Shown here piece after piece: positions 1 through 61,100 of a DNA stretch of 64,000 nt. Location: positions 62,001 to 126,000 of the forward strand of contig NIVC01002125.1 of assembly GCA_002269645.1 (NCBI GenBank), written 5' to 3'. This DNA is from Macrostomum lignano (taxonomy: Eukaryota). Below the pieces are notes generated by a model. That model made no database searches. It was given only the letters and a program-made list of their open reading frames with translations, and had not been told where the DNA came from. Within the stretch, counting starts at the first letter, position 1. Each line of letters opens with the position of its first letter. A program made the translations under genes and the position numbers.

Positions 1-1549
1 AATAGACAGGAAGTCAGGAATCTCACCCCAATAGATGTTAGAAAACAAAGTGTAAATCTAATGATCTTAATAAATATAAGTTTTACTTATTACTGTTACT
101 TATTAGTAATCCATGTACTGTACATGCGTGTCAACCCTGTTTAATTTGTTTGTTGCTATTTTTTGTTTATTTCTCCAACTATCTGCTGTAATTTTCTGTC
201 TCTATCGAATTTTTCATCTTGCTGCTCAGCCGTTTTTTTTTTCTTTTTAGCTTACAAAAATGTTTCTCAGCGCCTGGAGCGAGTTCAGCTCCTTGGTGTA
301 GCTCGCTTTATCAGCTAATGTGTATTTGATATGCCGGCCCCACTGTGCGTGTTTTTTATTAAGTAAACTGAAAGAACTTTAAAATACATTTAAAAATTGC
401 ATATTTACTTGATAGTGTGCGATAATATATATTAGACGTAAGATAGACATAATTATTCACCTGTGTACTGGCTTGTTTCTGTAATCTTGTCTGCATCGAC
501 TGCTCTTTTCGTAACTTATGTCATATTTATGTATGAGTATGCATATTTCTATTATTAATAAGTCTAAATTAATATATTTTTTATATATGAGTTAAGCAAC
601 CAAAGTTTTAATTATAAGCATCTATAACTGGAAAAGACTTGTAGTACTTAAAGAAATTGTCTTAATAATTAGACATCAACAAAAAGGTAAATAGATTTCT
701 CATTGGAATTCTCTAATGTTTTCTGTTCGGCTTCTATCCGGTTCGTCAGTGTTGTCTCCTTGGTGTTATTCTGGTGTATAGGTGAATCTAGCATCTGCAC
801 TCAATGGAATGGGGGAAGAGTTGGCACTAATTAAGCGATTATGTTTTGTTTAGAATTTTGTATAAAATCTATTCGATTTGCGGTGCTTAATTTTATTTAA
901 TCACATTTTTATTTTCAAGCACTTGTCATCGAGTGCTCTTCCTTTGTCACTCTGTCCTTACTCAACTCCGAAGAATCAGTGACCACTGAGCCTGTAACAG
1001 CTACTATTATTATTGAAATAAACTGTCCATAAACCGTAGCTTAACCCCTTCGCCACCAGCTATTTCTTCTATTAATTATTATTACAGTAAAAATACTTTT
1101 TGCAATACTGTTTTTGCCTGTAATTATTTGCTTTACGAAATCAAACAGTTTAAATATTAATAATATAACAACCTTGTGACAGCATTCAGTTTGTAGAATT
1201 TAACTTGCAAACACCATTTTTCTATTAGAAATTTGTTTGTGTGCTGTGCGTTTGATTATTGCTAATGCAAAGCAGAACATAATTGTTGCGGCTTGAAAAG
1301 CACCGGCAAGCAAATTATACTTACACTTTGTGTGCCTGTCTGTTAAGGCTTTTATTGCACGCAAACGTTACGCAAATTTTTGTGTTTTGTACTTTTATTT
1401 AATTCTGACTGGCTAGAACCCTAGGGGAATAAATAGAGAAAATAGAGGAATAAGAATAATGTTTGATGATAAAAAATAAATGTGTGATGATCTTGAAATC
1501 AAAAGTCAAATAAAAACAAAGTGACTGATACACTAGAATGGGAATGATC

Positions 1550-2085
1550 TTGACTGATTGGCTAAAGCGGGAATGACATTGAACACTTGAAATTAGCTGA
1601 TTGGCTGAAGCGGGAATGACTTTGAAATTAAAATTAGCTGATTGGCTTAAGCGGGAATGACCTCGAAATTTAAATTAGCTGATTGGCTAAAGCGGGAATG
1701 ACCTCGAAATTGAAATTAGCTGATTGGCTAAAGCGGAAATGACCTCGAAATTGAAATTAGCTGATTGGCTAAAGCAGGAATGACCTTGAAATTGAAATTA
1801 GCTGATTGGCTAAAGCGGAAATGACCTCGAAATTGAAATTAGCTGATTGGCTAAAGCGGAAATGACCTCGAAATTGAAATTAGCTGATTGGCTAAAGCGG
1901 GAATGACATTGAACACTTAAAATTAGCTGATTGGCTGAAGCGGGAATGACCTCGAAATTGAAATTAGCTGATTGGCTTAAGCGGGAATGACCTCGAAATT
2001 GAAATTAGCTGATTGGCTAAAGCAGGAATGACCTTGAAATTGAAATTAGCTGATTGGCTAAATCGGGAATGACCTTGAAATGAAA
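1550..2085. repeat. 41-bp tandem repeat (~13 copies), unit GCTGATTGGCTAAAGCGGGAATGACCTCGAAATTGAAATTA
   Basis: Read directly: CTGATTGG recurs every ~41 bp from ~1553 to ~2050. Confidence 0.95.
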
Positions 2086-2224
2086 GGTCTCGCTAATGGC
2101 TAGAAATAGATGTTGCTAATTAGAGAATCAACAGTGAAACCATGCGCTCTTTTTATGTCGCCACCCCGAACAACAGGACAAGCCCATCTGACAAATTCGC
2201 AAGCCACAAACTGTAGTGAGGAAT
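1550..2224 (+). promoter_or_regulatory. Candidate ASZ1 promoter with tandem CCAAT (NF-Y) boxes and E2F/CHR-like motifs
   Basis: Each unit carries CTGATTGGCT (reverse complement AGCCAATCAG, the NF-Y consensus) and usually GCGGGAA. The array ends ~140 bp before the ATG at 2225. Function is inferred. Confidence 0.4.
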
Positions 2225-5200
2225 ATGCAATCCCGAGGCAACTTCTTAATCGACGGCGAATGTTACGACGACGACGATGACGACTATGACGATGAAGATG
2301 ACTACGACGACGACGATGATGACGCAATCATTGACCCGTCTGCTGGCGTCGAGGCTGGACAGCGGCGTCGGCTGCAGCAACGATTCCGGGCTTCGCTGCC
2401 GCATCCTGGCGAGGCGACGGCGGCAGCAGCAATGACGGTCGGCAGTAGCGGCTGGGGCCAGCGGCAGCCGCAGCAGCGAAGTTCCCTGGCTCAGCTGCAG
2501 CTCCAAGAGGCCATCAGTAGCCGTCAGCTTGGCCAGAAGCTGGACGAACTGCTTGACCGTCTGGCTTCGACGGCTGACTTTGACATCAATGCGCCGTTGA
2601 AGAACGGCTGGACGCCTCTAATGCTGGCTGCCGAACGGTGCAACATCGAGATGGTCGCCGCCTTGATTGACAAGGGTGCACGCGCTGACCGTGTCTCCGC
2701 CGACGGCACCACCAGCCTGATGGCCGCCTGCGGCAGCGGCAGTCGGCACAGCGACGAATCTGCGGTTCTAGAAATGATTCAATTGCTGATGGACTGTGGA
2801 GCTAAGGAGACTATTAATACCGTGTCGGCTAGGTGAGTTCTCATTAGAGATTAGTGCCTTTACCTTTCTCCACTAGTTCAATAAATGTCGCTAATTTTTC
2901 ACCAAGTTTAATAAGTGGATAATTCGTCATCAATCAGACAGGGCACGGCTCTGCACCTGGCTGCTCGATTCAATTATCCTCGGGTTGTCGCTCGCCTCCT
3001 GGCCGATGGCGCCGGGGTCGATACGCTGTCGGCCGGATCGGACGGGCGCACACCGCTAATGGAAGCCGCTGCCAGAGGCAATCTCCGCTCCGTTGAGGCC
3101 CTGCTGTCCGGAGGCGCCAAGCCCGACCGTCGGGATCGTCGGGGCCACACGGCGGCTGAGTTAGCAGCCAACGCCGGCTATCCACGGGTGGCCCGCCTCA
3201 TTGACAGTCCCGTAGGCGAGCTGACCGTCTCTCTGGCGGGCGACGGCGACGGCGAGGGATGTATCGGTGAAGTTGCCCCCAGCGTGGGCTCGACCAGCGC
3301 CGACGATGAATCCGCCAAACTGGACGACCTGTCCAGCTTTTTCTACGGCATCGGTGAGCAATCCTTTTATGGTCATTCCATCCTAACCTGAAATCGGCCT
3401 CTCCTGACATCTCATGGCTTGACATTATCCTGTATTCACCGCCACCCTCTCCTGACACATTCCTGTCCTGTCGTGACGTCACCCTCTCCTAATGTCACTG
3501 TCGTGACGTCACCCTATCCTAATGTCACTTTCATGACGTCACCCTCTCCTAATGTCACTGTCGTGACGTCACCCTCTCCTAATGTCACTGTCATGACGTC
3601 ACCCTCTCCTAATGTCACTGTCATGACGTCACCCTCTCCTAATGTCACTGTCATGACGTCACCCTGTCATTTGCATTTGTGTATTTTAATCATGTTGCTT
3701 ATTGGCGATAGATAGATGGAATAAATATTAAATAAAAAAGGTATAAAAAGCGAAGATAGACTGAATCGACAAACTCGGATACTTATTAATACAGTAAAAT
3801 ACTAACACGACTTAACGTCAGATAAAACGGCAAGACATAACTTACGAACAAACGATTTACTGATCTATTATACCTTGACGCTTTTAAAAACCTCATAAAA
3901 CAGGGTTCGAAACCCTGCACGGACTCCAAACAACCTTATGAGCTTAGACTACTACATGTAGCATTGAGGTTTATACTAGTTCAATAGTAAACTTCAAATA
4001 TCACTTTGTGAGTCTTCTTTGCCATGGTTTCTGGCCTTGCTGCAATCTTAACCATACCCAGTACGAAGAGTGAGTGAAGTCTTTTCACGTCTTTTTTAAG
4101 ATTTATGGACAATATTTTGGTCATTTACCTACTTCTCGGTCATTTTGGAAGTAAAGTACCCTTCAAAAGTGCTCAACATAAAGTATCAAAGTAGAGGTGT
4201 GACGGTCAAGAATGAAGTGCTCATTATTAGTCCTACCTTGATAATAACACATAAAATACGCTGTCAGTCAGTTCTTAAAGAAAACAGCGTCTCAGAGTGC
4301 GCCTCGGGGTCAGGACCGAACCAAATATGAGACGCCAGCGTCAGCCAGCAGGCAGTCAACGAAGCACCAAGTCCGCACCTGTACGACTTGGCACGGATGA
4401 TGAGCTGGGCCAGCTGAAGTTACTGCAACGGTTCGTTTGGACAAACCAGGCCGACGCAGCGATACAGTGCCGCGTTTGTGACTTGCTCGTCGCCTATCTA
4501 GAAGGCAGCCGGCAGTGAGGTAGGTCCTCGGGCTGCAGGACCGGCCTCACAGAGCGAAAGGAAGCGCAGGCAGGCCCGCGGCGACGCCGCGAATCCTCGC
4601 GCACGTCGGGAACCAGACCGCCAATGTAGTCAAACAGCTGACATCGCGGAAGCTCCGTCGCCTTCGAACTCGGTGCAAAACCGCAGTCTTGGCCATCCGA
4701 GTGTTTATCACGTTCCAGCCTCTACCGCAATTAACCAGTCCGATTCTAACTAAAATCCATGTACTCGTACATTTAGTACAATGCTACAATATTGTCTTCA
4801 AGCGGGACTTTTTAGAGCGATATTTCTGCCACGAGAATACTGTTTTATACAGTACTCCAAATGCAACTCCAATTACTAAGCTTGACTACCAGTGGTACAA
4901 GGAATTGTTTAGAACAGTTGACAGTACCAAAGTTAATGAATTAAGCCGAATTGAAAATCCATACAAGTGTATAATTTAAAGCAAACTATTAGTCCTTGTT
5001 CGTGCTTTTGTCGCTTTTCGTATTTTTTCACGCCAGCAACTAGCAAATAATATTGCAACCAGACCGTGTGGTGTGAGTCTCATCCGCTGCCAGGATTGTC
5101 AATACAAAGTATACTGAAAAGTTAGCAGATCAAAGTAACAAATAATGTTAGCGCAAATGCAAACCAACATTCGCTTCCAGATGGTTAATCGTCACCTGGA

Positions 5201-7796
5201 AACTATAAAAATATATCAGCTGGTCTCAAGTAGGAACCCCACCTGACGCATAGCACAAATTTCACTTGATAAACTTTTCAATAAACTTTTCCTCTCGAAA
5301 TATTCAAGGGACCAAACATCGGCTTTAGAACAAGTGATTTCTTTCTCGAGCACGCAAGCCTCACGACCTCCCACCGTCACGCCGAGTCCCCCGCTGCTCG
5401 AGCATCCGCCGGAGTGACTCAAGCCTGGCTTGAGCAGCAGCACCGGAGCACAGTCTCCAGTCACCGGCCGCAACGTCTGCCTCCACCGGCACCACGTAGT
5501 ACTTGCTTGAGCCCTTCTCCACCGCGAACTCGCGAGACAGATCCTCCGGCTGCAGCTGGCAGCCGAGCTTTTGCAGCCGGAGCACCTTCTCAACGCTGAG
5601 CCCTTCGAAGGCTACAGTCGAGTCGACGTCCAGAAAAGCCAGACCATCGCCGCAGTCCTTCTCCAGCAGCAGCAGGTCCTCGCCGCAGACACGGAAGAAG
5701 TGCACGCACAGGTGCAGGCGCCGAACAGATTTTGCGCAGATCAGCTCAGCCTGTCTGGAGGCGTAGCGACGACGAACTGGATCGAACCACAGGAACCGAA
5801 TGACATTAGACTGCTGTTGGGCTTCTTGACTGCGAACCTCTGGGCCTGGGTCCTTCCTATTAAATGATCCAATGGAAGGTTTGGTGTAGCTTTTTATATT
5901 ACCATTTTCAAAGCAGGTTTTTTTGAACTGTGCTTTGAAAACTGCTTGGGTTTGATTCCAGTCAATACACGGTGTATCATGAGTAGAACCGCATGTCCTG
6001 ATGAGAAAGAAACCACCAGTGATATACAAGGCGGAGGATAATTCAACCCACGAGTCAAGACTGATAAATAGTCGTACCTTAAAAAAGATTTCTGTACTCT
6101 ATAAAAACTGAAGATTGCAGCTAATGAGCTTTAAACATAAATACAGTTCGATTTATCAACTAGATTTCAATAGGGAGCCCTGTTAATTGCATGTGACCGA
6201 TGCGGTTAGCCATTCTGAAAAGTTGATGTATTCTGCAACTGAGCTAGTTTCAAATAAACCATGAACAATTGTATGAACTGTCACTGTCATGGCACAGCAC
6301 GCGGCTACAGCTAGAAGGAGAATTAATTACAAGATGGCTGTTGGGCTATTTTGAAACTTCTTTGAACTGCATGCGCTACAAACTCTTCTTAAAAAAGATG
6401 AACTCTAAATTTTCCATGTATAATTTTAAAAATACCTAGCTAAAGCCGTCTTCTTCTTCTGCTGCTGTTGTTGCTGCTGCTCCTGCTGCTGCTGCTGCTT
6501 CTGTGTGGCGTTCCGACTAGCCAGCTGAGCATTAGCCTGCCTCATTGGCAGCGACTTCACCGTCTCCGAAGTTGTCGCCGCGTCGTCCATCTGGCAGGCA
6601 TCCGCGGCGGCGGATTCTCCGTGGCATCGACAGACACAGCAGGGCGGAGTACCGGTTTCCACCGGCTTCGTTGGAGGCGGCTGCTGCGTAAGCGAGTCCC
6701 CGCGGTTGCTGCTGTTGCAGGGGACTTGACGACGTCGTCTGCCTCCGGTGTTGGTCGCGGTGTCGGCGGCAGGTCCGGTCGCCACTTCGCTGCCGGACAG
6801 CAGAGTTGCCAAGCCGGCCAGCTGCTGGATTGTGCTGTCCAACCGGTCCTTGAACTCCTTCAGGCTCTCCTCATTCTGTTCAGTGGTCAACTGAGTCCTG
6901 GTGGGCTCCCTCGAGCTGCTCATTGAGGTGTTCGTGGAGCTGGATTGCTGGCCATAGCTCATGGCCGACTTCACTTGCCGGTCTTTTTTCGTAGTGCCAG
7001 CTGTCTTGTGCATCCTTGGTTTCCTACAAAAAACCGCCAAAATAAAGTTCAGATAGCCGCGCCTTTAAGTTTTATAGAGTTATTTCGTTAGTGTGTGACA
7101 CTTCTAAAGATCTGGCTATGCAGTTTGGTGCATAGATATAAGGCAGTGACTACAATGAATGCCGCGCAAAAAATTTCTGGGTAATTTCAAAGTTTAAATG
7201 GCATCAAAAACTGACATAAAAACTATTATAAGACATTTAGATTTAGACAGATTGATTGAAACTCCCGATTTAGGGCGTATTCTAAGCGGCACTCTTTAGG
7301 AAGTGGCTGAGTAGTTAGCTTATATGGTACTTGCTTATGCGCACTTAAAAGAGGATTGAAAGTAGTTGCCTAGTAGAATCACGGGATTTCAGAGAATATG
7401 GATCAAGAACTTTCAATCATTAACAGAGACAATCTCATGAGATTCCTCTCTTTGTTTGATGCCACACCTTTGATATTGAAATCAGGCTAGTAGTTAACCC
7501 TAAAACCTCGCTCTGTTTTCTTTAGGCTATCCAGAAGTGGCAAACCAATTTCGCGCTCACTGTTTGACTTTTGTTGACCTGCTGACGACGACAGACTCGG
7601 CGCTTGAAAAAATCGGCGTCCGACAAGTCGGCGTTCGTCGGCGCATTTTGGAGGCCGTGCGGCAGCTGCACAGGCGGCCCTGGCGGGATTCCAGCATGCC
7701 GCAGCTGGCTACTGGGAGACCGCCTGCCGCTGCTGACTATCTGGCGATACTGGCCAATCTGCACAGGTCTGTGTCTGTCTGCTTGTCTGTCTGCCC

Positions 7797-7828
<32 letters not shown>

Positions 7829-8462
7829 GCCCGTCTGTCTGCCTGTCTGTCTGTCTGTCAGAGTGTATGTCTGTCTGCCCGTCTGTCTGTCTGCCTGTCT
7901 GTCTGTCTGTCAGAGTGTATGTCTGTCTGCCCGTCTGTCTGTCTGCCTGTCTGTTTGCCCGCCTGTCTGCCCGTCTGTCTGTCTGTCTTTCTGTCTGTCT
8001 GCCCATCTGTCTGTCTGTCTGTCTGTCACAGCCCACCAACCAACCCAATCGCTGCCCGCCACCCCATTTAGGCACCTGGAGTTCATGAATGCCACGCTAA
8101 AATACCTGACCGACCACGCTGAAGCCGCGGCTGCTGACGCTGCCGCTGATGCCGCCGCGGCCAAAGCCTCTGTAGCTTCGGCTGGACAACCATCGGCAGC
8201 AGCCGCCGCCACCGCGGCTGTTGAGGCTGCGAGCTCCGGCGGCCCAGCCGACGGCCTTCGCAATCAGCGCGTGCTGGCCCGGGCCCGAAACTCCTGCCGG
8301 CTGGCCGCTGGCGAGTGCCGCCGACTGCTTGGCCGCCTGGAGACCGGCTTAGCAGCGCTGCAGCGCCTGCAGCCTGTTGAACGGCCAGACCGTCTGCCAG
8401 CGATCGGCGAGGCGGGCAGTAATAAATCTGCCAAGTGGAATTTTGCGGCTATCGGTGTCTGA
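2225..8462 (+). CDS. ASZ1: Ankyrin repeat, SAM and coiled-coil/bZIP-like protein (ASZ1/GASZ-like); exons 2225-2832, 2938-3353, 7526-7766, 8072-8462
   Basis: Acidic N-terminus, ankyrin repeats (GWTPLMLAAERCNIEMVAALIDKGA, GTALHLAARFNYPRVVARLL, GRTPLMEAAARGNLRSVEALL) and a SAM domain formed across intron 2 (LDDLSSFFYGIGYPEVANQF...LEKIGVRQVGVRRRILEAVRQLH), followed by a helical region. All junctions are GT-AG and phase-consistent (2,1,2). A hydrophobic tail continues in frame past TGA 8460-8462. Confidence 0.8.
3470..3665. repeat. 30-bp minisatellite (CGTCACCCTCTCCTAATGTCACTGTCATGA) in ASZ1 intron 2
   Basis: About 6 near-identical units; explains ORF 3419..3715. Confidence 0.9.
4300..4721 (-). 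other. GC-rich coding-like segment; possible degenerate copy or extra exon of the nested gene
   Basis: The minus strand gives RLERDKHSDG...VLQPEDL...(TAG)ATSK and, in another frame, QLAQLIIRAKSYR. These echo LEKDCGDG, LQPEDL, KGSSK and QAELICAKSVRR of the nested gene. Interrupted by stops. Confidence 0.3.
5361..6962 (-). CDS. Nested two-exon gene (exons 6962-6436, 5856-5361; ~340 aa): low-complexity/polyQ N-half plus possible ubiquitin-like domain
   Basis: Donor AG|gtattt at 6436/6435 and acceptor tttaatag|G at 5857/5856 are both phase 2 and join ORFs 6426..7040 and 5361..6029. SVRRLHLC...EDLLLLE...FLDVDSTVAFEGLSVEKVLRL resembles a beta-grasp pattern (inference). An alternative ATG lies at 7013. 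Confidence 0.6.
7768..8030. repeat. (CTGT)n-type microsatellite filling ASZ1 intron 3
   Basis: Degenerate CTGT/CCGT/CTGC tetramers directly after the donor at 7767. Confidence 0.95.
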
Positions 8463-8933
8463 GCCGCTGTGTGCGCCGCTGCGACTGTTGCTGGCTTCTT
8501 AGTGGCTGCGAAGCGGCGCTGATCGTTGGAGTTTTGGTTGGACTGATCGAAGAATTTGTGTACGAAATTGAAGCTACTTTTAAGCTTAGCGATAGTATAA
8601 AGTTAGTTTAGTAATGCATGTTTGTTTGCTACTATGGTTACTCGTGTAATAACTGACTTAACTGGGCTCTTATTCATATTAGTCCTCATTAAACTAATAA
8701 AGTCTAGTATAATAACCCTTTCAATGCATGCATTTGTGCTTGTACTCAAAAGCGCAGTTCCGGTGTTTTTTATTTATTAAAAGCCATTTGTTTTTTCTGT
8801 GTGCGCTATTTGTTTTTTTCTAATTTCTTGAGTTTGAATGAAAATATAAAAATACTGCTGCAAAGTGCTTCAAGTTTGTAATGTACTCGTGACGTCTCTA
8901 ATTTAACTCAATATGACTTCAGTTTAAGGCAAG

Positions 8934-10908
8934 ATTTAGTTCCTGTTTCAGACAGGATTTAGGTACTGTTTCAGACAGGATTTAGGTACTGTTTCAGACA
9001 GGATTTAGGTACTGTTTCAGACAGGATTTAGGTACTGTTTCAGACAGGATTTAGTTCCTGTTTCAGACAGGATTTAGGTACTGTTTCAGACAGGATTTAG
9101 TTCCTGTTTCAGACAGGATTTAGGTACTGTTTCAGACAGGATTTAGGTACTGTTTCAGACAGGATTTAGGTACTGTTTCAGACAGGATTTAGGTACTGTT
9201 TCAGACAGGATTTAGTTCCTGTTTCAGACAGGATTTAGGTACTGTTTCAGACAGGATTTAGTTCCTGTTTCAGACAGGATTTAGGTACTGTTTCAGACAG
9301 GATTTAGGTACTGTTTCAGACAGGATTTAGGTACTGTTTCAGACAGGATTTAGGTACTGTTTCAGACAGGATTTAGGTACTGTTTCAGACAGGATTTAGG
9401 TACTGTTTCAGACAGGATTTAGGTCCTGTTTCAGACAGGATTTAGGTACTGTTTCAGACAGGATTTAGGTACTGTTTCAGACAGGATTTAGGTACTGTTT
9501 CAGACAGGATTTAGGTACTGTTTCAGACAGGATTTAGGTACTGTTTCAGACAGGATTTAGGTACTGTTTCAGACAGGATTTAGGTACTGTTTCAGACAGG
9601 ATTTAGGTACTGTTTCAGACAGGATTTAGGTACTGTTTCAGACAGGATTTAGGTACTGTTTCAGACAGGATTTAGGTACTGTTTCAGACAGGATTTAGGT
9701 ACTGTTTCAGACAGGATTTAGGTACTGTTTCAGACAGGATTTAGGTACTGTTTCAGACAGGATTTAGGTCCTGTTTCAGATAGGATTTAGGTACTGTTTC
9801 AGACAGGATTTAGGTCCTGTTTCAGACAGGATTTAGGTACTGTTTCAGACAGGATTTAGGTACTGTTTCAGACAGGATTTAGGTACTGTTTCAGACAGGA
9901 TTTAGGTACTGTTTCAGACAGGATTTAGGTACTGTTTCAGACAGGATTTAGGTACTGTTTCAGACAGGATTTAGGTACTGTTTCAGACAGGATTTAGGTA
10001 CTGTTTCAGACAGGATTTAGGTACTGTTTCAGACAGGATTTAGGTACTGTTTCAGACAGGATTTAGTTCCTGTTTCAGACAGGATTTAGGTACTGTTTCA
10101 GACAGGATTTAGTTCCTGTTTCAGACAGGATTTAGGTACTGTTTCAGACAGGATTTAGGTACTGTTTCAGACAGGATTTAGGTACTGTTTCAGACAGGAT
10201 TTAGGTACTGTTTCAGACAGGATTTAGGTACTGTTTCAGACAGGATTTAGGTACTGTTTCAGACAGGATTTAGGTCCTGTTTCAGACAGGATTTAGGTAC
10301 TGTTTCAGACAGGATTTAGGTACTGTTTCAGACAGGATTTAGGTACTGTTTCAGACAGGATTTAGGTACTGTTTCAGACAGGATTTAGGTACTGTTTCAG
10401 ACAGGATTTAGGTACTGTTTCAGACAGGATTTAGGTACTGTTTCAGACAGGATTTAGGTACTGTTTCAGACAGGATTTAGGTACTGTTTCAGACAGGATT
10501 TAGGTACTGTTTCAGACAGGATTTAGGTACTGTTTCAGACAGGATTTAGGTACTGTTTCAGACAGGATTTAGGTCCTGTTTCAGATAGGATTTAGGTACT
10601 GTTTCAGACAGGATTTAGGTACTGTTTCAGACAGGATTTAGGTACTGTTTCAGACAGGATTTAGGTACTGTTTCAGACAGGATTTAGGTACTGTTTCAGA
10701 CAGGATTTAGGTACTGTTTCAGACAGGATTTAGGTACTGTTTCAGACAGGATTTAGGTACTGTTTCAGACAGGATTTAGGTACTGTTTCAGACAGGATTT
10801 AGGTACTGTTTCAGACAGGATTTAGGTCCTGTTTCAGATAGGATTTAGGTCCTGTTTCAGACAGGATTTAGGTACTATTTTAGACAGGATTTAGGTACTG
10901 TTTCAGGT
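8934..10908. repeat. 23-bp minisatellite (AGGTACTGTTTCAGACAGGATTT), ~85 copies
   Basis: Highly homogeneous tandem array read directly. Confidence 0.98.
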
Positions 10909-11208
10909 TGATATTCCGGCCGGTTTTATTGATATTTCAACTAACCTTTTTCAACTAACCTAAACTTTACCTAACCTAACCTAAACTATAGTAAAGTTTT
11001 TCATGCAGTTAATTGTTAAGTTCACCTGTACAAAACGACTAATTTTGATTGCTTGCTAATTAATTTTTGAATCGCTAGCATTATATAACTTTGAATTCTT
11101 TATAATTCTTGCTTTCAGGTCGCCACGAACGGCGATTGTCAGCCTAGACTGAAATACCAGCAACAGCCAGCAAGATTTACAGGCAATTCCTTGCTCACTC
11201 CCTCTAAT

Positions 11209-11760
11209 ATGCGCCTAGCCAAGCTTCGATCCCTAGATGAATTTCTCGGCCGCTCGTCGCGTTTCCAGCTGCCGGACCTGCAGCATCAGGAGCGCTGGAG
11301 CAACCGGGTGCAGCAAAACCTGCTGTACTATCAGACTAACTACATGGCCGTGTTCTGCCTCAGCTTCATCATCTTCCTACTGGTTGATCCGGCTAGCGTA
11401 CTATGCGGATGCGGCATTGTCGGGGCCTGTCTGGCGGCCGGACTCTGGCTAGCAAATGGCGGCGCTGAACGGCGCCTACAATTTCGCGACGCCGTCTCGC
11501 GTCGGCCGGCGCTGACCGTCGCGCTTAGCCTGGCCTGCGCTCTGGTGCTGCTCTACTGCCTGCGCCCCGCTGCCATCTTCCTGCTGGCCGCCCTGCTGCC
11601 TCTGTTCGCCTGTCTGGTGCACGCCTCGCTCCGACTGCGCAGCGTGTCCAGCAAGCTGTCGCATAAGCTGCGCGGCCTTCGCTCTCCCGAAGATGTCACC
11701 CCGATGGAATTCGTGCTCGGCTGGCTGACGGCTGTAGAGGCCGAGGGGCTCGATCTGTGA
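11209..11760 (+). CDS. PRA1 family protein (PRAF3/ARL6IP5- or PRAF2-like), single coding exon, 183 aa
   Basis: LRSLDEFL...RFQLPD...RWSNRVQQNLLYYQTNY is the PRA1-family signature, followed by two long hydrophobic hairpins. ATG at 11209; acceptor-like ttgctttcag at 11109-11118. Confidence 0.9.
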   Translation: MRLAKLRSLDEFLGRSSRFQLPDLQHQERWSNRVQQNLLYYQTNYMAVFCLSFIIFLLVDPASVLCGCGIVGACLAAGLWLANGGAERRLQFRDAVSRRPALTVALSLACALVLLYCLRPAAIFLLAALLPLFACLVHASLRLRSVSSKLSHKLRGLRSPEDVTPMEFVLGWLTAVEAEGLDL

Positions 11761-13357
11761 TTTAGTAACCAAGCACTAATTAGATATCGAGGTATTATCA
11801 TAATCAAAACAACATTCAAATTTACTCTCCGCCCCCCCCCTTTTTTGTTTGACGGTTTCGCGTAGTTTCTATAAGGTGGCTCGTAAGGTGGCTAATGCAG
11901 TAATGCAGCAAGACGCAATTTAAACCCGAGATTGGGCTTCAGATCCTGGTGTCCCGTTGAAAACGATACTGAGAAAAGAATCCCTCAGAGCCTCAGAATC
12001 GTTTCAGAGTCGCAGACAACAAAAGGCCTCGAATTGACTCTTAGGCGACTCTTTGACGAATTTTTGGCGACTTGTACCGTGGCATCTCGTCGTTTTAAAG
12101 TCGTCTAGAGTCTCTTCTTTCCTTTTTTACCTGTGTTACCTTCTTGGCCGGGGTGCCGTTGTCATAGGAGTGTCTCGTGGTTAAAACCAATCCAATTAAA
12201 CCAGTTTTAGTGGTTGTATTAGAGACTTCATAGACCCTTACCTAGTTTTTTGTAACCTAACCTTTTCCCATTCGTCAATATGCTGAGTACTTTTTTTCTT
12301 TGTTTAATACTATAAGTATGCAGTCTACACATTAGCACATGTATTTTAGCAGTACATTACACATATATCAAGTGAAAAAATTCTATTGTATGCGGACATT
12401 CTGTACAAAGTTATTATTATTGATTAGTATTTTTGATATTACATTGATAGTTAGCTATTTCTGCACTGTTCGCGGTAAATATGTCAAAATGGTTGTTGTG
12501 TGCGCTAACTTAATTAAGTAATTTCAAAAGAGTTTGAATTGTTTTTAGTAGCCATTGTACGTTGCGCTGAAAGGTATTAGTTAGAAGATTATAATAATGT
12601 TGGCAGTTAGTAACTAGGCGTTGAGAGTATGCCGATGTTCGATAAGTACTTTCTTATATGTAAAGTGAGTGCACTGTGTACTTAAATGCACCTATTAAAG
12701 TATCAGACATTTTCTAGACCGCAAAACTTAAAAGTATCATATTTACTGCTGCTAGCTGAAGTTTTCTATTACTCTGTTTCTAATCAGATTAATTTGCTTG
12801 AAGAGAGCACGATTTTTTCTAATCCAGCTATGATGCTTCATTTGTCTTTGTTTTGTATTGTGCATTCTCTTATTTTATTACATTTGTCTGGATTTATAGT
12901 CATATACAGTTAATTGGCTGGCTTGTTTATCAACTTTTTCATTTATAATTAACATATAATTATATTTGTAAACTCAGCTTTAAGCTCTACAAGACTTAAT
13001 TTCTTTTCATCGGATAATTCACAGTAATTTTTAACTCTTGAAAGAAAGGCGTTTTCGATTCGTTCATTTCGTTAATTTTCTCTCGAACCGTGTGGAAGCT
13101 ATGCACTTTAAAAATGCAGAGAAAAAGGCCTGATTATGAATTGTCTATGGCAGAGGGCAGAGAGCTCGCAGATGCCAGAACGATTTGCCTGCACACCGCT
13201 CAAGCCTTTCCTTTATTCTCTTAGTAACAGCTTGTGGAAATAAGACGCCTGAGTTTCATTGTCAAACAACTTCAATTGCCATCTCTTTAGTAAGCCTTGC
13301 AGCAGCTTTTTTGATCGATTTTGCATCACAACTTGTTGCACAAGTCCAAGCTCGAGC

Positions 13358-15460
13358 ATGACCATGGATAGCGAGCACGGTCGCGAGCTGCAGAAGCAGC
13401 TAGCCGTTCACAAGAAGGTGGTCGTGGATGAGACCGTGGAGCGAATGGAAACAATTAGGCCGCCTATATACTATGACATGCCTCGACCAGACCAATTTCT
13501 GTCCGCTGACGTCAGCCAATCGTTGCGTGATTTGATCAGCTGCCCGGAGGGCTTCTTTGGCGTCGACCATCCAAATACGGCCTGGCTGATTAACCTGCTC
13601 AAGGACACGTCTGAGTGGCGGCTGCAGAAATGCCTAGTATCGCTGCGGACCCGGCCTCTGTTTGACAACACCAAATACTATCAACTGATTGATCGGCCCA
13701 CCTATTATTGGGGCAACTCCGCTAGCATGGAGAAGCCGTTGTTTAAATCCAACTCGATGCTTTATTTAAACGCATTCGGCGTTGCGCTCTATTTGAAAGT
13801 TGAAGTCGGCTGTCACAAGCTGGCGGCGGCCAAGTCGGGCAAGAACTATCTGGTCAGCGCCATTGTACCTCAGTATGCGTCCTTCGTGCACGACTGCGAC
13901 TACGACTTGGTGCGCTTCAATTACGACTTCCTGTGCATGAAGCGGGAGTATTTCGACGGTTTGCACTTTCTGGCCATGACCGGCTGGAATCCGTCCAGCA
14001 CCACGTTGTTCACATACAGACGCAAGTACTACCAGTTCAGTGTGCCGTTCACGGATTGGGTGGACGTTCTGCGCTACCTACTGGAACGGAAACCTTCGTT
14101 GAACGTTGCTAGACTAGTGGACAAGATGTATCGCCTGCAGTACGTCGTGAATCCGGCGTACAACTTTAACATGATGTTTATGAAAGAGATCGGCAAAGTA
14201 ATGATGGAGGCCTTCGAGCTAAAGGAGCTGACGCGTTACAACTTCAACAATCCGACCAAACTTGGTAACTATGCGGGCCGCAAGGTGCTTAAGAACAAGG
14301 AAGTGCCAGTGCCGGACGAGTATGCCACTGTGTTTTCCGACAAAGAAGGTAAACCAAAGAACCCACTGAGGCCCGTTGTGCCCAACATCATGTCTTACGT
14401 GCGTCGGTTGCTATCCTTTCAGTACTACTTTGATGGCAAGCACTTGTTTGCTCTGCCGCAGATCATCCGGGCTATTCTATGCTTCAAGTATCACGATTTT
14501 TTTGTCGTCTCGCAGACGGTAAAAAATTCGTGCGAAACGGACTCGACCGGTGTGCACCGGGTGTACATTGACCCGCTGATCTTTCAGATCAACTACTTTC
14601 TTAATTTGAAGTCGGACGGAATGTACCTGCGCCACAAGCAGTGGTCCAGCCACTCGGCATCCGCTGACACGGATGGCATCACTGAGGAGGAGCGGACCTG
14701 GTTCTATCGATTCGACACTTTCAACTGCCTTAGTCTGCTTGCCGGCTTGCTGCAAAACTGTCTCATCAAGAACGTGTCAGATGTTATTGTTGAGAACGTC
14801 TGTGATCTTATTGTTCACGTGCTGGTAGATTCTGAACTCATCGAGCCCTTCTTTCGCTATTCGTATTACGATACGTACTTTGGTCTGACTAGTGTTATTA
14901 ATTGTGTGCCAAACCTCATGTCCAAAACTGTGCTGCGTCTGTTAAAAAAGGCACCAATCACGCTGGTGAGCAACTTTGAGGTTACTCAGCTAGCCCGCAT
15001 GTTTACCATGAGCTTCTGGAAAATCAGCGCCCAGATTGACTGCGTGACGGTGCCTAAGACCATCGACGAGATGGCCACCTTCCTGCTGTGCAAGCGGCGT
15101 CGAGTCAGCATGAAAGTTGAAGGCCCAGCCACGGGCGAGGCGATGTCGGGCGCCAGCTCCATTGGTGCCGCCGGTGGAATCACCATGTTTGTGCGCAACT
15201 ACGACGACATGACGGAAATCAGCGCCGGTGACGAGAACGCCGAGCAGCCAGCCTCAGAGACCACCAAGAAACAGGACGAGGAGAGGAAGCACGTTTACGA
15301 GTACAAGCACATGGAGATAGACGCCCGCTACAGTTCCGTATTCCCTGTGTACTTCGAGGGTCTTAACAAAGTTCAGGTGAACTTGGACGAAAACAAGATG
15401 TTCGATGATTGCATATTCGAGTCTTACTCGCAGCACATGTTGGCCCATTTGAGGAAATGA
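13358..15460 (+). CDS. Intronless ~700-aa protein of unrecognised family
   Basis: A 2.2-kb uninterrupted ORF (13259..15460) with non-repetitive sequence and GC well above the flanks. First ATGs are 13358 and 13364 (accATGG). AATAAA lies near 15851. No motif recognised. Confidence 0.75.
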   Translation: MTMDSEHGRELQKQLAVHKKVVVDETVERMETIRPPIYYDMPRPDQFLSADVSQSLRDLISCPEGFFGVDHPNTAWLINLLKDTSEWRLQKCLVSLRTRPLFDNTKYYQLIDRPTYYWGNSASMEKPLFKSNSMLYLNAFGVALYLKVEVGCHKLAAAKSGKNYLVSAIVPQYASFVHDCDYDLVRFNYDFLCMKREYFDGLHFLAMTGWNPSSTTLFTYRRKYYQFSVPFTDWVDVLRYLLERKPSLNVARLVDKMYRLQYVVNPAYNFNMMFMKEIGKVMMEAFELKELTRYNFNNPTKLGNYAGRKVLKNKEVPVPDEYATVFSDKEGKPKNPLRPVVPNIMSYVRRLLSFQYYFDGKHLFALPQIIRAILCFKYHDFFVVSQTVKNSCETDSTGVHRVYIDPLIFQINYFLNLKSDGMYLRHKQWSSHSASADTDGITEEERTWFYRFDTFNCLSLLAGLLQNCLIKNVSDVIVENVCDLIVHVLVDSELIEPFFRYSYYDTYFGLTSVINCVPNLMSKTVLRLLKKAPITLVSNFEVTQLARMFTMSFWKISAQIDCVTVPKTIDEMATFLLCKRRRVSMKVEGPATGEAMSGASSIGAAGGITMFVRNYDDMTEISAGDENAEQPASETTKKQDEERKHVYEYKHMEIDARYSSVFPVYFEGLNKVQVNLDENKMFDDCIFESYSQHMLAHLRK

Positions 15461-18400
15461 GGAAGTCATAGCCAGTGAGTATAATCTATCATCTGAAGTA
15501 CGAATTCAGAAGTACAAGGACGACATGTAAGACTATAAATATTGGATGCTTAATGCTGAAAAGTGTTGCAAATGTTTTTTTGTTGTAATATGAGCTTTTT
15601 AGTTTTTTCATCGGCTTTCAGCTCAGCTTCTTAGTGTGATTTTTCATGCATTACGGTAGTTTTGCATTCAAATTTTGCAGTAAATAGTATTTAATCTGAA
15701 AATGCTATCATTTACTGCCTCACATATTTCTTTTACCTAATTTAATTTTGCCAATGCAGAACGTTTTTTGTATTTATAAAGCTTTCTTATACTCGTACGT
15801 AACTTTACAAATGTATTTCTGCATGCATATGGTTATCTGTACTTTTGGTAAATAAAAAGAAATACTAACGGCTATCACTATCAGTATGGGTGGATACAGT
15901 GCTTCCACTTCCACTTTCGCCCAAGCTAGCTACTGAAATTTCAATAGCTCTTTCTTAGTATTTTAATCGAATCGAATCACATACACTGTACGTCTGTAAA
16001 ACCTGCGTGGTAGGAATAAGAAGGTTTATCGATCCAGATTTGATGTGGGTAGATGAGGAGTTTTCGAATTCGCACGTCAGGTACGTACATATCCATTTCT
16101 GTATACTTCAAGTGTCTTGTACTCATACTTATTCTGTACTATCATTAGAAAAAGAGCTGCCGAAAATACTAATAACACTAAAATCTATATTTACATAGCT
16201 AACTTTTTATTTTGAACTTTTTTCTTAGAATTTATAGCTTATTGTTTTACTAAGAAAGCCGAAAACTTTTTTGAGTGCCCAAATTTAAAACAGTATTTGG
16301 GTAGTTCTCAAATTAAGGTCATGATGTTTTGGTACAGAAAAAAAAAGTTTTTGAATAAAGTAATTATTTTGCAAAAACGATTCTTTCGTCAATTTAATTA
16401 AAAAACTGCCGTTAAAACCACAAGAAACCAAATATTTAAGACGAAATCTAGCAATTTGTTATTTTTCGCAACGGAAAATAAAACGACCAAAAATTGTGAA
16501 ATAATGCAAGTTTTCTTTTATTTTTTTATGAATTATATACATCTTTTATTCTATGTTTACTATTTAATAAGTATTATTTCAATAGAAAATGTTATTTTTA
16601 AATCAACATTTTGTTTTTTTCGTATAAATTGCTTGTATTTAAAATTATCGCGTAACAAGAAACACCCGAAATAATTGATATTGTACCACTCAAGAACTTA
16701 ATTATTGTACTTAAACACCGAAATATGAAGCTTAAAATATACAAAACTGGTTTAGCTAAAAATTAGGCTTGCAAAATATGTCTTTTAAAGCATTAAAAGT
16801 TTTTTTGAATTAGAATATATATAGTAAACGAGCTAGGAAGCCATTTCTTTTAAAACCTAAAATGCATGTATCTTTTTTCGAACAGACTTGCGTTTTTTTA
16901 AAAAATAATTCAGCAAGCATTTATATTCTGCAACATAGCTTTAATACTATTTTACTATTTTACTATACTATTTTCTTATGTAATTAGGCTGCATAACTAC
17001 TAAAAGAACAGCTTATAAATTTAAATTAAATACTTTGGTCTTGGTAAGTTAATTAGCCTATTACAGACGTCTGACTCGGCAGCCACATGGATCACTGCAA
17101 TTGCTCTGGCGAACCTCTGTAATCGATTCTGGCCCTGCACTAGCTGTCATGCTCGGTATACAATTCGTCTCATTTGATAAATTACGTCGATGCCTGCAGA
17201 ACTAACCACATCCAAAGGACCACTGCACATCTTAGATTGTGGCACATACAATGATGCTGGTGTTCTGGCAGAGAAACAGGTAAAAGTGCAGCAAATAGCA
17301 TTACATATCCGTCCGAGAGGTGTGCAGTTTACAGTGCTTTAGCCAATTGGGTCAGTAGAATTAAATCGATCACATTAGAATAAAAGTAGATGTTCGCTGT
17401 ACATGTAACAAACCAATAGCAAGACACTATTGGATGTCTTTCCCTTCTACTGATGCTCGTACATCAGCTGGCTGTCTCCACAGGCCACAGCTCATCGCAT
17501 TCTCTGTTAACCGCCGCTTCAGTGCTGTCAGCCGCACTTAACTGTGTCTGGCCTCGGTATATAGAGTTAGTCCCAATGGAAAATCATCATCTAAAACATA
17601 TCTAAAGCGTAATTGTCAATCGAAGAGTAATATAAAATATAGTATGTCTGTTATGGTACTGCCATGACTTATCTGTTAAACACTTCAAAAATTCGTGTGG
17701 CAGCACTCTGTAGAGATTCCATCTTTCTGTACCATATTTAATATTACATTGCCAGCATCAATGGCAATTAAGTTTTTTCTTTTGTCTTTTTTCTTGTTAG
17801 TAGCTATATGCATCCAAAGGTGAAAAGTATCAACTGAATGTTTAAGTTGCTACATGTATATCTTTAATGAATTGCAGAACATATGAGAATGAATTTAATG
17901 TTTCAAAGAAATTAATTTTTGTGCTTCAGACAGCTAATTTCATTGATTATAAATCAGATGCAAAATTGTTTTAATACTATTTCTTGACTAATCAAATCAT
18001 TCAACTTTTTTTATTATTCGTTACTCTTATTTTCTTTTCAGTTTCTACTACCTCTTGTTTTGACTCATTATGTTTACTTGTAACTTACAATACAAATTTT
18101 AAATCAGTTAAAAAAATTGTGTGAAAACAACAAAAAACGACTGTTTTTAAGAGAAAAATAGTCAATTTTATCTACATAAATCAAATTCTGTTTGTTCTGA
18201 CTAACATATTGGGTGATCAATAGCAAAAATTCATCTAAATACGAGCGTACATAAAAAAACATCCAAAAAACCTAACAATGTGCTGAGAAAAATTTTTTTC
18301 ATAACTAGAGACAAAAAAGTGGTACTTTTTCTCATCCCACAGATGAGGACTTTAAATTAAAATAACTTTGGTGCTACTTGCTTTGTTGTTGTCAGCGAAA

Positions 18401-19619
18401 TCTCTCTTTGTTAGGTTAATTTTGTGCTATTGAAAAAAACTTAAAATTGAATTTATTTAACTTTTCTTTTTAATATAGAATGAAACTGCCTTAATTGATA
18501 CTTTAGTGTTAGATATGACTTTCTTTCTTAAAAAAACAGCAGAAAACGTAGCTATTAGCTTATTCTATTAACAGAACAAATTAATTAAAAGTGGATTTTT
18601 TAATCATTCATAATGTTACGTTTCTAGCAAAAATCGAAATAGCAACATCTGCTTTGCAATCGAAAGAGTTAAATGGGTTCTAGGTTGTGCTAACCAAAGT
18701 TATAAATAACATTTATCAATTTTCTTTTTTAATAAGACCACGTGAACAGAATGTAGCTTCTCTAAAGTGGGTATTATAGCTCGTGCGATAATAAAAATAT
18801 ACATCGAAAAATGAAATAGCGCACTCTGATGAGATTAACATCAAAAGTTCAATGTTAAAATAGATTAAGACCCATGAGAGGCATATATTTTTTAAGTCCT
18901 TTTAGAGCTAAAATAAGAAAAGATTCAATATTTCAGGCTGATTTTCAAAAATATTTGTTTCACTGCTTACGACTAAACTTTGAGAACGACCCATTTTTCA
19001 GAAAAAGGTATATACCAAAGTAACAACAAAGTATATAAACAAAGTATATAAACAAAGTATATAACAAAAGGCAACAAAGTATATACTGGCTACTAGCTGT
19101 GTCGTTCGTTATCACTGTCCATTCAATCGGTTTGTGATCAGTTTATCCAACAATCGATTGTCTTTTAAACAACTCAGAAAGATATTCTTAATTTCTGTTG
19201 TATTTTCTGTTATTTATTTATCTATTTCCACTTGTATTCGAGCGGAAATGTTGCGCGCAAGTTTTGGTCTTTTAAATCTTCAGAAGGGACTCTTTCTGGT
19301 AAGCGAAACGTAAGGTGACAGATATAAAAAGATAACCAAGTGACTAGAATTAAATAGTTTTTGTTTTCCAGTTCAGCAATTCTTATGCTTGGTAATTCTT
19401 GACTAGTTAATGAAGACAAAGTCTTTTCGCCCCAGTGAGCTTTGGGGTTGGAATTTTATAATACCTAGTGTTGTATCGATTATTTAAAGACTTTCAAGGC
19501 ATTATTAACGCTGATGCTCCTAATATTTTGCGTCGTGTCATACATAAAGTTAGCCTAATAGATAAAGTAGGGCGAGAGTTGTAAAATGTCTCTAACGTCA
19601 AATGATTTATAGGAAGGGA

Positions 19620-37223: not shown

Positions 37224-51461
<14,238 letters not shown>

Positions 51462-57230: not shown

Positions 57231-57439
57231 TCGCTAAAGGATGAAGAATGAGTCACTTCTGCAGCTGCGATACCGCGTTCCAGGATCAACATTTTAATGG
57301 GAATTCTGGACTACGGTAGTGATTTATGCTCAGATCCCGATTGCACTGGGTGTAACACCCCTCATAAAGTTTTATGCGCCACATATCGGCACTATAGAAA
57401 ACCATGCTACTCTTCCCTTTTGATCTGCGAGAACCCTTA

Positions 57440-60400: not shown

Positions 60401-60970
60401 ATCTCTCTCATCTCATCCTATCCCGATCTCTCTCATCTCACTCTATCCCAATCTCTCTCATCTCACTCTATCCCCCACCTCTCTCATATCACTCTATCCC
60501 GATCTCTCTCATCTCACTCTATCCCCCACCTCTCTCATATCACTCTATCCCGATCTCTCTCATCTCACTCTATCCCAATCTCTCTCATCTCACTCTATCC
60601 CAATCTCTCTCATCTCACTCTATCCCAATCTCTCTCATCTCATTTTATCTACACCTCTCTCCTATCACTCTATCCCACACCTCTCTCATATCACTCTATC
60701 CCAATCTCTCTCATCTCACTCTATCCCAATCTCTCTCATCTCACTCTATCCCAATCTCTCTCATCTCACTCTATCCCAATCTCTCTCATATCACTCTATC
60801 CCGATCTCTCTCATCTCACTCTATCCCAATCTCTCTCATCTCACTCTATCCCAATCTCTCTCATCTCACTCTATCCCAATCTCTCTCATCTCACTCTATC
60901 CCAATCTCTCTCATCTCACTCTATCCCAATCTCTCTCATCTCACTCTATCTCAATCTCTCTCATCTCAAT
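57440..60970. repeat. ~25-27-bp pyrimidine-rich minisatellite (ATCTCTCTCATCTCACTCTATCCCA), 3.5 kb
   Basis: Read directly; explains the 1189-aa and 444-aa ORFs. Confidence 0.98.
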
Positions 60971-61100
60971 TAATGGCTCCAGAAGCATCTCGTATTCCTT
61001 ATTGAAATATTTATGAAGCACTGACTGGGCAGCGACATCTCTCTCTGTCTGACAAGCTTTCGGAGGCACGCAGCACCCAGTGCAGTTCATCGGTACTCAC

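What the first reader, a model, noticed from the sequence alone, without database searches (positions are those of the whole stretch)
8420..8522. In-frame TGA splits the C-terminal tail anchor of GASZ/ASZ1
Seen: ...KWNFAAIGV-TGA(8460-8462)-AAVCAAATVAGFLVAAKRR-TGA(8520-8522). The 19 codons after the first stop stay in frame and complete a ~23-residue hydrophobic segment ending in KRR. Established: GASZ is anchored to the mitochondrial outer membrane by a C-terminal hydrophobic segment, which matters for nuage/piRNA processing, and a hydrophobic helix plus basic tail is the typical tail-anchor signature. Inference: this is stop-codon readthrough giving soluble and anchored isoforms, a nonsense allele or decaying duplicate, or a base-call error. 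The TGA-G context is not the classic leaky TGA-CTAG.
Basis: partly seen in the sequence, partly recalled or inferred. Interest (0 to 1): 0.7.

Follow-up and report, generated by a model that had tools for sequence, protein, structure and literature searches.

The report
Premature stop in one GASZ-like copy
One of at least three near-identical copies of a GASZ-like germline gene in the polyploid flatworm Macrostomum lignano has a single G-to-T change that turns a glycine codon into a stop and cuts off the membrane anchor, which is an ordinary nonsense variant (or, less likely, an assembly error) and not programmed readthrough.

Summary
TGA at 8460-8462 is followed by 19 open codons (AAVCAAATVAGFLVAAKRR) and a second TGA at 8520-8522.

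The window is Macrostomum lignano assembly Mlig_3_7, contig NIVC01002125.1 from base 62001. The gene is BOX15_Mlig003500g4, already deposited as a protein ending ...AAIGV.

Two other copies in the same assembly (g1, g5) and three gene models from the older ML2 assembly all have GGA (Gly) at this codon. They encode a 571-aa protein with about four ankyrin repeats, a SAM domain and one C-terminal hydrophobic segment ending in KRR. The only difference at the site is G to T.

The copies differ by 2.2-3.2% outside exons and 0.3-0.5% inside them. This matches the published S/L1/L2 subgenomes of this neopolyploid. The window copy has no missense change against g1.

I found no SECIS element, no leaky stop context and no unusual downstream RNA structure. 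Conservation drops immediately after the second TGA, which is therefore the ancestral stop.

Verdict: a recent copy-specific nonsense substitution that removes the tail anchor from one redundant homeolog. A residual assembly error is the main rival, and reads could not be checked. Programmed readthrough is not supported. Interest is low.

The parts
2225..2832 (+). Exon 1 of the GASZ-like gene (BOX15_Mlig003500g4): ATG, acidic N-terminus, first ankyrin repeats
   Evidence: GT-AG splice model. The translation is identical to the deposited proteins P0036 and P0037.
2938..3353 (+). Exon 2: remaining ankyrin repeats and the start of the linker
   Evidence: Pfam Ank families cover residues 127-281.
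7526..7766 (+). Exon 3: SAM domain
   Evidence: Pfam SAM_1 and SAM_2 match residues 328-389.
8072..8459 (+). Exon 4 coding part up to the premature stop: Ala-rich linker, Leu-rich helical segment, and the first 6-8 residues of the hydrophobic anchor
8460..8462 (+). Premature TGA at codon 552. The homeologous copies g1 and g5 have GGA (Gly), so the change is a single G-to-T at 8460.
8463..8519 (+). Nineteen formerly coding codons (AAVCAAATVAGFLVAAKRR): the rest of the tail anchor plus the basic KRR end. They are 100% identical to the intact copies.
   Evidence: hydropathy
8520..8522 (+). Ancestral stop codon shared by all copies. Indels and substitutions between copies begin 5 bases after it.
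8523..8701 (+). Probable 3' UTR, with AATAAA at 8696-8701
   Evidence: Read directly from the sequence; inferred, not tested

Best explanation
The TGA is a single-base nonsense substitution (GGA Gly552 to TGA) found only in this copy. It is one of at least three homeologous copies of a GASZ-like gene in the neopolyploid Macrostomum lignano DV1 genome.

Shown:
- The ancestral reading frame ran to the second TGA.
- It encoded a 571-aa protein with about four ankyrin repeats, a SAM domain, a helical region and a C-terminal tail anchor.

Inferred:
- Translation of this copy stops at codon 552 and gives a 551-aa protein with only 6-8 of about 23 hydrophobic residues, so it has no membrane anchor.
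- The stop lies in the last exon, so the mRNA should escape exon-junction-dependent decay and a soluble product would be made.
- The intact copies supply anchored protein, so the loss is tolerated.
- Mouse GASZ lacking its anchor can still be pulled to mitochondria by full-length GASZ. The truncated product here may therefore be nearly neutral or mildly interfering.
- The event looks recent, because this copy carries no missense change and its downstream 57 bases are unchanged.
For: The window is 100% identical over 18,462 bases to NIVC01002125.1 of GCA_002269645.1. Its gene is deposited as PAA60663.1 and ends at AAIGV.

Copies g1 (NIVC01001901.1) and g5 (NIVC01000575.1) lie in the same gene neighbourhood and have GGA at codon 552. 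Three ML2-derived models (P0038, P0039, P0002) also have Gly.

Window versus g1 shows 7 synonymous differences, 0 missense, and the nonsense change. Window versus g5 shows 4 synonymous, 2 missense, and the nonsense change.

SNP divergence is 2.2-3.2% outside exons and 0.3-0.5% inside them. This fits the published three subgenomes S, L1 and L2 at 1.9-2.4% (PMC10733133) and the assembly's known redundancy (PMC5730564).

The boundary between conserved and variable sequence falls just after the second TGA. The only hydrophobic 19-residue window of the protein spans the stop.

The behaviour of GASZ without its anchor comes from PMC10781510 and PMC12507516.
Against: No sequencing reads could be inspected, so the T rests on the assembly alone. 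Copies g2 and g3, implied by the locus naming, were not retrieved. Expression of this particular copy is unverified. Sequence-level orthology to named ASZ1/GASZ was not demonstrated, only the shared architecture.
Confidence: 0.8

Rival explanations
1. It is an assembly or polishing error. The true base at 8460 in this copy is G, and the T is a consensus or Pilon artefact in a region where near-identical copies make short reads map to several places.
For: The assembly comes from PacBio reads (Canu) polished with multi-mapping Illumina and RNA-seq reads. REAPR called only about 64% of its bases error-free, and 36% of scaffold length is chimeric between subgenomes. The T is seen in a single gene model. 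None of the three ML2-derived models has the stop.
Against: Long-read consensus errors are mostly indels rather than substitutions (my own knowledge). A polisher only writes a base that reads support, and no other retrieved copy carries a T to borrow. The rest of this copy's coding sequence is clean, with no frameshifts. ML2 gene models cannot be assigned to copies at the protein level, so their Gly does not speak directly to this copy.
Confidence: 0.12
2. It is programmed stop-codon readthrough. The TGA is decoded at a useful rate, so this copy makes both a soluble 551-aa form and an anchored 571-aa form.
For: The extension is in frame, intact, and would restore a complete tail anchor. Functional readthrough that adds a targeting signal is known for other proteins (my own knowledge).
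Against: The stop is not conserved, since every other copy has GGA. The intact extension is explained by recent shared ancestry: at 2-3% neutral divergence only 1-2 changes are expected in 57 bases. The context is TGA-G, not the leaky TGA-C or TGA-CTAG. The downstream RNA folds no better than shuffled sequence (z = -0.57). The intact copies already supply the anchored form.
Confidence: 0.03
3. It is a retained, functional soluble paralog. The truncation is real and has been kept because an anchor-less GASZ-like protein modulates the anchored oligomers (sub- or neofunctionalisation after genome duplication).
For: This copy shows no missense changes and is otherwise intact. Anchor-less mouse GASZ still binds full-length GASZ.
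Against: The lack of missense change is equally expected if the stop is very recent. The 57 bases after the stop are still identical to the coding copies, so nothing shows a long history as a truncated gene. No data exist from other lines or species.
Confidence: 0.05
4. The TGA at codon 552 is decoded as selenocysteine.
For: Only that the codon is an in-frame TGA.
Against: No SECIS or any relevant Rfam match was found in 8000-12000, even at E up to 1. Homologous copies have Gly, not Cys or Sec. The position lies inside a membrane helix.
Confidence: 0.003

Closest known systems
GASZ/ASZ1 (mouse, zebrafish) and Drosophila Gasz: a mitochondrial outer-membrane scaffold for piRNA biogenesis
   Same: The order of parts is the same: ankyrin repeats, a SAM domain, a helical or leucine-rich region, and a single C-terminal hydrophobic segment with a basic end. 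The literature describes four ANK repeats, SAM, bZIP and a C-terminal MLS/TMM.
   Different: The flatworm protein is longer (571 aa against 476 aa in mouse). It has an acidic N-terminal run and an Ala-rich insert. No source names it GASZ; it is listed as 'hypothetical protein' or 'SAM domain-containing protein'. Sequence-level orthology, germline expression and mitochondrial localisation are all untested.
Engineered mouse GASZ lacking its mitochondrial localisation signal (GASZ-deltaMLS)
   Same: The window's product to the first stop is in effect a natural anchor-deleted form. It is truncated just inside the hydrophobic segment with all upstream domains intact.
   Different: The mouse allele is the only source of the protein, and it abolishes intermitochondrial cement and fertility. 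Here at least two intact copies remain in the same genome, so a strong phenotype is not expected.
Copy-specific nonsense mutations (early pseudogenisation or fractionation) in recent polyploids
   Same: There are three syntenic copies with about 2-3% non-coding divergence in a documented neopolyploid. One copy has a single disabling substitution and the others remain under purifying selection.
   Different: There is only one lesion and no other sign of decay. Whether it is fixed, polymorphic or an assembly error is unknown.
Functional translational readthrough that adds a targeting signal (for example peroxisomal extensions of mammalian LDHB and MDH1; my own knowledge)
   Same: A stop codon is followed in frame by a short sequence that would change where the protein goes.
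   Different: In those cases the stop and its leaky UGA-CUAG context are conserved across species. Here the stop is private to one copy, the context is UGA-G, and the extension is simply the ancestral C-terminus.

Membership tests
GASZ/ASZ1 | About four ankyrin repeats in the N-terminal half | tested here: met
   Pfam Ank, Ank_2, Ank_3, Ank_4 and Ank_5 all score above their cut-offs and cover residues 127-281.
GASZ/ASZ1 | A single SAM domain after the ankyrin repeats | tested here: met
   SAM_1 scores 27.5 bits (cut-off 23) and SAM_2 scores 26.7 bits (cut-off 20.5), at residues 328-389.
GASZ/ASZ1 | A helical or leucine-zipper-like self-interaction region between SAM and the anchor | tested here: inconclusive
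   A Leu-rich segment (about residues 485-525, RLLGRLETGLAALQRLQ) is visible in the sequence. I ran no coiled-coil or structure prediction.
GASZ/ASZ1 | A C-terminal transmembrane mitochondrial localisation signal | tested here: met
   This is met in the intact copies g1 and g5. Their only hydrophobic 19-residue window lies at residues 546-568 (KD mean up to 2.16) and is followed by KRR at the C-terminus. It is not met by the window copy's own product, which stops at residue 551.
GASZ/ASZ1 | Sequence-level orthology to named ASZ1/GASZ proteins | tested here: inconclusive
   No named ASZ1 was retrieved. One search returned only generic ankyrin proteins outside M. lignano. One search was swamped by giant ankyrin proteins. 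Searches returned nothing. No ASZ1 chain appeared among the PDB matches shown (best 60 of 351; all 20).
GASZ/ASZ1 | Germline expression, mitochondrial surface localisation, and a role in piRNA biogenesis | not testable with these tools
   No expression data were available. Supplements of the M. lignano germline papers held no entry for Mlig003500 or ASZ1.
Programmed stop-codon readthrough | The stop codon is conserved at the same position in homologs | tested here: not met
   There is GGA (Gly) in g1 and g5 at the DNA level, and Gly in P0038, P0039 and P0002.
Programmed stop-codon readthrough | A leaky stop context (UGA followed by C or CUAG) or a stimulatory downstream RNA structure | tested here: not met
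   The context is TGA-GCC. The 101-nt downstream fold is -33 kcal/mol against a shuffle mean of -31.3, giving z = -0.57.
Programmed stop-codon readthrough | The extension is kept under purifying selection beyond what recent ancestry explains | tested here: inconclusive
   There are 0 differences in 57 bases. Only about 1-2 are expected at the local 2.2-3.2% neutral divergence, so the test has no power.
Selenoprotein (UGA = Sec) | A SECIS element in the 3' UTR, and Cys or Sec at the homologous position | tested here: not met
   There is no SECIS match in 8000-12000 at E up to 1. Homologs have Gly.
Homeolog-specific nonsense allele in a neopolyploid | Several syntenic copies at subgenome-level divergence, the lesion private to one copy, and a single-base change from a sense codon | tested here: met
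   Three contigs carry the same neighbouring genes. Non-exonic SNP divergence is 2.2-3.2% against the published 1.9-2.4%. The change GGA to TGA is found only in the window.
Homeolog-specific nonsense allele in a neopolyploid | The variant base is supported by independent reads phased to this copy | not testable with these tools
   No read access. Exact-sequence look-ups of plausible ORF products in the protein collection, which includes run assemblies, found nothing for either allele.

The most novel reading that the evidence does not exclude
The truncated copy could be a real, expressed and retained anchor-less GASZ-like homeolog. In that reading its soluble product joins or titrates the anchored oligomers made by the intact copies, and perhaps a little readthrough adds some anchored form. 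That would make it a natural dosage modulator of the mitochondrial piRNA scaffold that arose after genome duplication.
Probability: 0.05. Interest if true: 0.45.

Novelty: new member of a known kind. Interest (0 to 1): 0.12.

Why it matters
It matters little beyond annotation. The result shows that the deposited 'partial' protein PAA60663.1 is a truncated product of one homeolog. It also shows that the Mlig003500 family, listed as 'hypothetical' or 'SAM domain-containing', has the GASZ architecture, which helps anyone studying the piRNA pathway in this flatworm model. It is one concrete example of a disabling change in one subgenome copy of a neopolyploid. If the variant is real, a natural anchor-less allele sits beside intact copies, and that could serve as a built-in control for localisation studies.

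Tried and rejected
1. Independent read-level evidence. I looked for fragments or ORF products of either allele in the large protein collection, which includes run assemblies. Two C-terminal searches returned nothing, not even the self hit. The likely cause is that Ala-rich words and the X run defeated the word index. Exact look-ups of the 551-aa product and of seven plausible last-exon ORF products also found nothing.

2. Sequence-level orthology to ASZ1. The exhaustive HMMER search listed only M. lignano's own models and giant ankyrin-repeat proteins. PDB searches gave only generic ankyrin and SAM hits, and no ASZ1 chain appeared in the matches shown. Paper supplements held no Gasz sequences or Mlig003500 entries.

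3. Selenocysteine. There is no SECIS.

4. A tiny intron removing the stop. A GT at 8455 or 8457 with the AG at 8501-8502 would make an intron of 46-48 nt. It would delete the hydrophobic core or shift the frame. The other copies have the same bases apart from G8460, so I rejected it.

5. An alternative +1-frame C-terminus (ORF 8435-8611, with a hydrophobic stretch). Rejected because the copies differ by a 1-base and a 21-base indel just after 8522.

6. A parallel 'premature stop' in the neighbouring PRA1 gene of copy L001 (TAA at codon 13). It lies upstream of the first Met, so it is probably in the 5' UTR and is not a comparable case.

7. Assigning the window copy to subgenome S or L. Exonic and non-exonic divergences give conflicting nearest pairs, so I made no assignment.

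Full report
**Observation.** In the frame of the last exon it gives ...SNKSAKWNFAAIGV, TGA at 8460-8462, then 19 open codons (AAVCAAATVAGFLVAAKRR) and a second TGA at 8520-8522. The open stretch is not significant on its own. With this exon's composition, 19 codons stay free of stops about 65% of the time. The comparison with other copies, below, gives it meaning.

**Gene and source.**
- I built a four-exon model with canonical GT-AG junctions: 2225-2832, 2938-3353, 7526-7766 and 8072-8522.
- Its translation matches a 571-aa Macrostomum lignano protein at 99% identity over its full length (P0001, BOX15_Mlig003500g5).
- The 90%-identity cluster also holds g1 (P0036, 571 aa), g4 (P0037, 563 aa, 'partial', ending at AAIGV) and two UniProt models from the older ML2 assembly (P0038, P0039).
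- The contig carrying g4, NIVC01002125.1 of GCA_002269645.1, is 100% identical to window bases 1-18462. The window therefore starts at base 62001 of that contig, and the gene is g4.
- The truncated product is thus already in GenBank. The annotators accepted the first TGA as the stop.

**What the protein is.**
- Pfam finds ankyrin repeats over residues 127-281 and a SAM domain at 328-389, all above the curated cut-offs.
- A Leu-rich helical-looking segment follows.
- The only strongly hydrophobic 19-residue window of the whole protein lies at residues 546-568 (Kyte-Doolittle mean up to 2.16). It is followed by KRR at the very end.
- This is the architecture described for GASZ/ASZ1: four ANK repeats, SAM, bZIP, and a C-terminal transmembrane mitochondrial localisation signal (PMC10781510, PMC12507516, PMC6601507).
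- To my knowledge no other animal ankyrin-SAM family carries a C-terminal anchor, so 'GASZ-like' is a reasonable name.
- I could not confirm orthology at the sequence level. Searches were either swamped by generic ankyrin proteins or returned nothing. No source names the protein GASZ.

**The stop codon compared with other copies.**
- Copies g5 and g1 lie on other contigs (L001 and L003). They share the neighbourhood: an upstream 283/284-aa gene, an antisense model inside intron 2, a PRA1-family gene and an ETF-alpha gene (g1, g5), plus a 700-aa gene called on the window and g5 contigs; on g1's contig it was not called, but the same ORF is intact there.
- At codon 552 both have GGA where the window has TGA. 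The DNA alignment of 8380-8720 shows this as a single G/T column.
- The three ML2-derived models also have Gly there.
- Across the 1716-base coding sequence, the window differs from g1 by 7 synonymous changes, no missense change, and the nonsense change. It differs from g5 by 4 synonymous changes, 2 missense changes, and the nonsense change.
- Outside exons the copies differ by 2.2-3.2% in SNPs plus many indels. Inside exons they differ by 0.3-0.5%.
- Just 5 bases after the second TGA the copies start to differ, with a 1-base indel, substitutions and a 21-base deletion. The boundary between coding and non-coding sequence therefore lies at 8522, and the ancestral frame ended there.

**Genomic background.**
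- The DV1 line of M. lignano is a hidden polyploid with three homeologous subgenomes, S, L1 and L2. Its make-up is SSL1L2 or SSL1L1L2L2.
- SNP divergence between the subgenomes is 1.9-2.4%. The Mlig_3_7 assembly typically holds three copies of each locus, and 36% of its scaffold length is chimeric between subgenomes (PMC10733133).
- The assembly was made with Canu from PacBio reads and polished with Pilon using Illumina and RNA-seq reads. It contains 180-312 Mb of duplicated sequence (PMC5730564).
- The three loci here fit that picture.
- A neighbouring 733-aa ORF shows only synonymous differences among the three copies. These copies are therefore generally under purifying selection.

**Interpretation.**
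- The simplest reading is a G-to-T nonsense substitution private to this homeolog.
- The product would end at residue 551 with only 6-8 hydrophobic residues left, which is too few to span a membrane.
- The stop is in the last exon, so the mRNA should not be a target of exon-junction-dependent decay (inference). A soluble, anchor-less protein would be made.
- In mouse, deleting the anchor moves GASZ to the cytoplasm and abolishes intermitochondrial cement and fertility. Anchor-less GASZ can still be recruited to mitochondria by full-length GASZ through self-interaction.
- With at least two intact copies present, the flatworm allele is probably tolerated.
- It looks recent. This copy has no missense change, and the 57 bases after the stop are unchanged. 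The second point is weak, since only 1-2 changes would be expected there anyway.

**Rivals.**
- *Assembly error.* This cannot be excluded, because I had no access to reads and look-ups for independent assemblies of either allele found nothing. I rate it about 0.12. A substitution unsupported by any other retrieved copy is an unlikely consensus or polishing artefact, and this copy's coding sequence is otherwise clean.
- *Programmed readthrough.* It fails each test I could run. The stop is not conserved, the context is TGA-G, and the downstream RNA folds no better than shuffled sequence (z = -0.57).
- *Selenocysteine.* There is no SECIS, and the homologs have Gly.
- *Other routes past the stop.* A micro-intron that skips the stop and a +1-frame alternative end were both considered and rejected on sequence grounds and on lack of conservation.

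**Verdict.** This is an ordinary feature of a redundant polyploid genome and is already reflected in the public annotation. The decisive check is simple: short reads spanning 8431-8541 can phase T8460 with this copy's markers C8431 and G8541.

Noticed in passing
window 1554-2085: A 41-bp tandem repeat (12.9 copies, 92% matches) lies directly upstream of the GASZ-like start codon. Each unit holds GATTGGCT, a CCAAT-box-like motif on the reverse strand. The number of near-exact units differs between the homeologous copies: 10 in the window, 5 in L001 and 7 in L003.
   Followed up: partly
window 8922-10906: A 23-bp tandem array (86 copies, 97% matches, unit GTTTCAGACAGGATTTAGGTACT) starts about 400 bp after the gene and has strong positive GC skew. 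There are 85 units in the window, 83 in L001 and 23 in L003. Its weak Rfam 'miRNA' hits are far below the gathering scores and are probably chance.
   Followed up: partly
window 7772-8027 (intron 3) and 3464-3665 (intron 2): Intron 3 holds a (TGTC)n microsatellite of about 64 units, and intron 2 holds a 30-bp repeat of 6.8 copies. Intron 3 is 305 nt in the window but 737 nt in L001 and 697 nt in L003.
   Followed up: partly
window about 5361-7697, minus strand (inside intron 2, reaching exon 3 antisense): GenBank carries an antisense gene model nested in the 4.2-kb intron 2. Its length differs in the three copies: 406 aa in the window, 373 aa in L001 and 358 aa in L003. Its two large ORFs (5361-6029 and 6426-7040) have no Pfam match. 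Whether it is a real gene or an annotation artefact is unclear.
   Followed up: partly
window 13259-15460, plus strand: An intronless 733-aa ORF (annotated as 700 aa) has no Pfam match. It differs among the three homeologous copies only by six synonymous changes, so it is a strongly constrained gene of unknown function.
   Followed up: partly
window 11119-11760; L001 19303-19944: This is a PRA1-family gene. Copy L001 has TAA at codon 13 of the annotated frame, but that lies upstream of the first Met and is probably in the 5' UTR. L001 also has two private missense changes.
   Followed up: yes
window 39856-40992 (-), 43737-44519 (-), 57404-60973 (+): An ORF with DUF3504 and a below-cut-off QRICH1 match lies at 39856-40992 and may derive from a mobile element. 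There is an exon-sized fragment matching cyclic-nucleotide phosphodiesterase at 43737-44519. A 1189-aa ORF with no Pfam match lies at 57404-60973.
   Followed up: no
proteins P0039 and P0001 (codons 354 and 542): The ML2-derived model P0039 combines Cys354 with Val542. None of the three Mlig_3_7 copies I retrieved has that combination (g1 is Cys/Ala, g5 is Ser/Val, g4 is Cys/Ala). This hints at a further haplotype (g2 or g3), at gene conversion between homeologs, or at base errors in one assembly.
   Followed up: no
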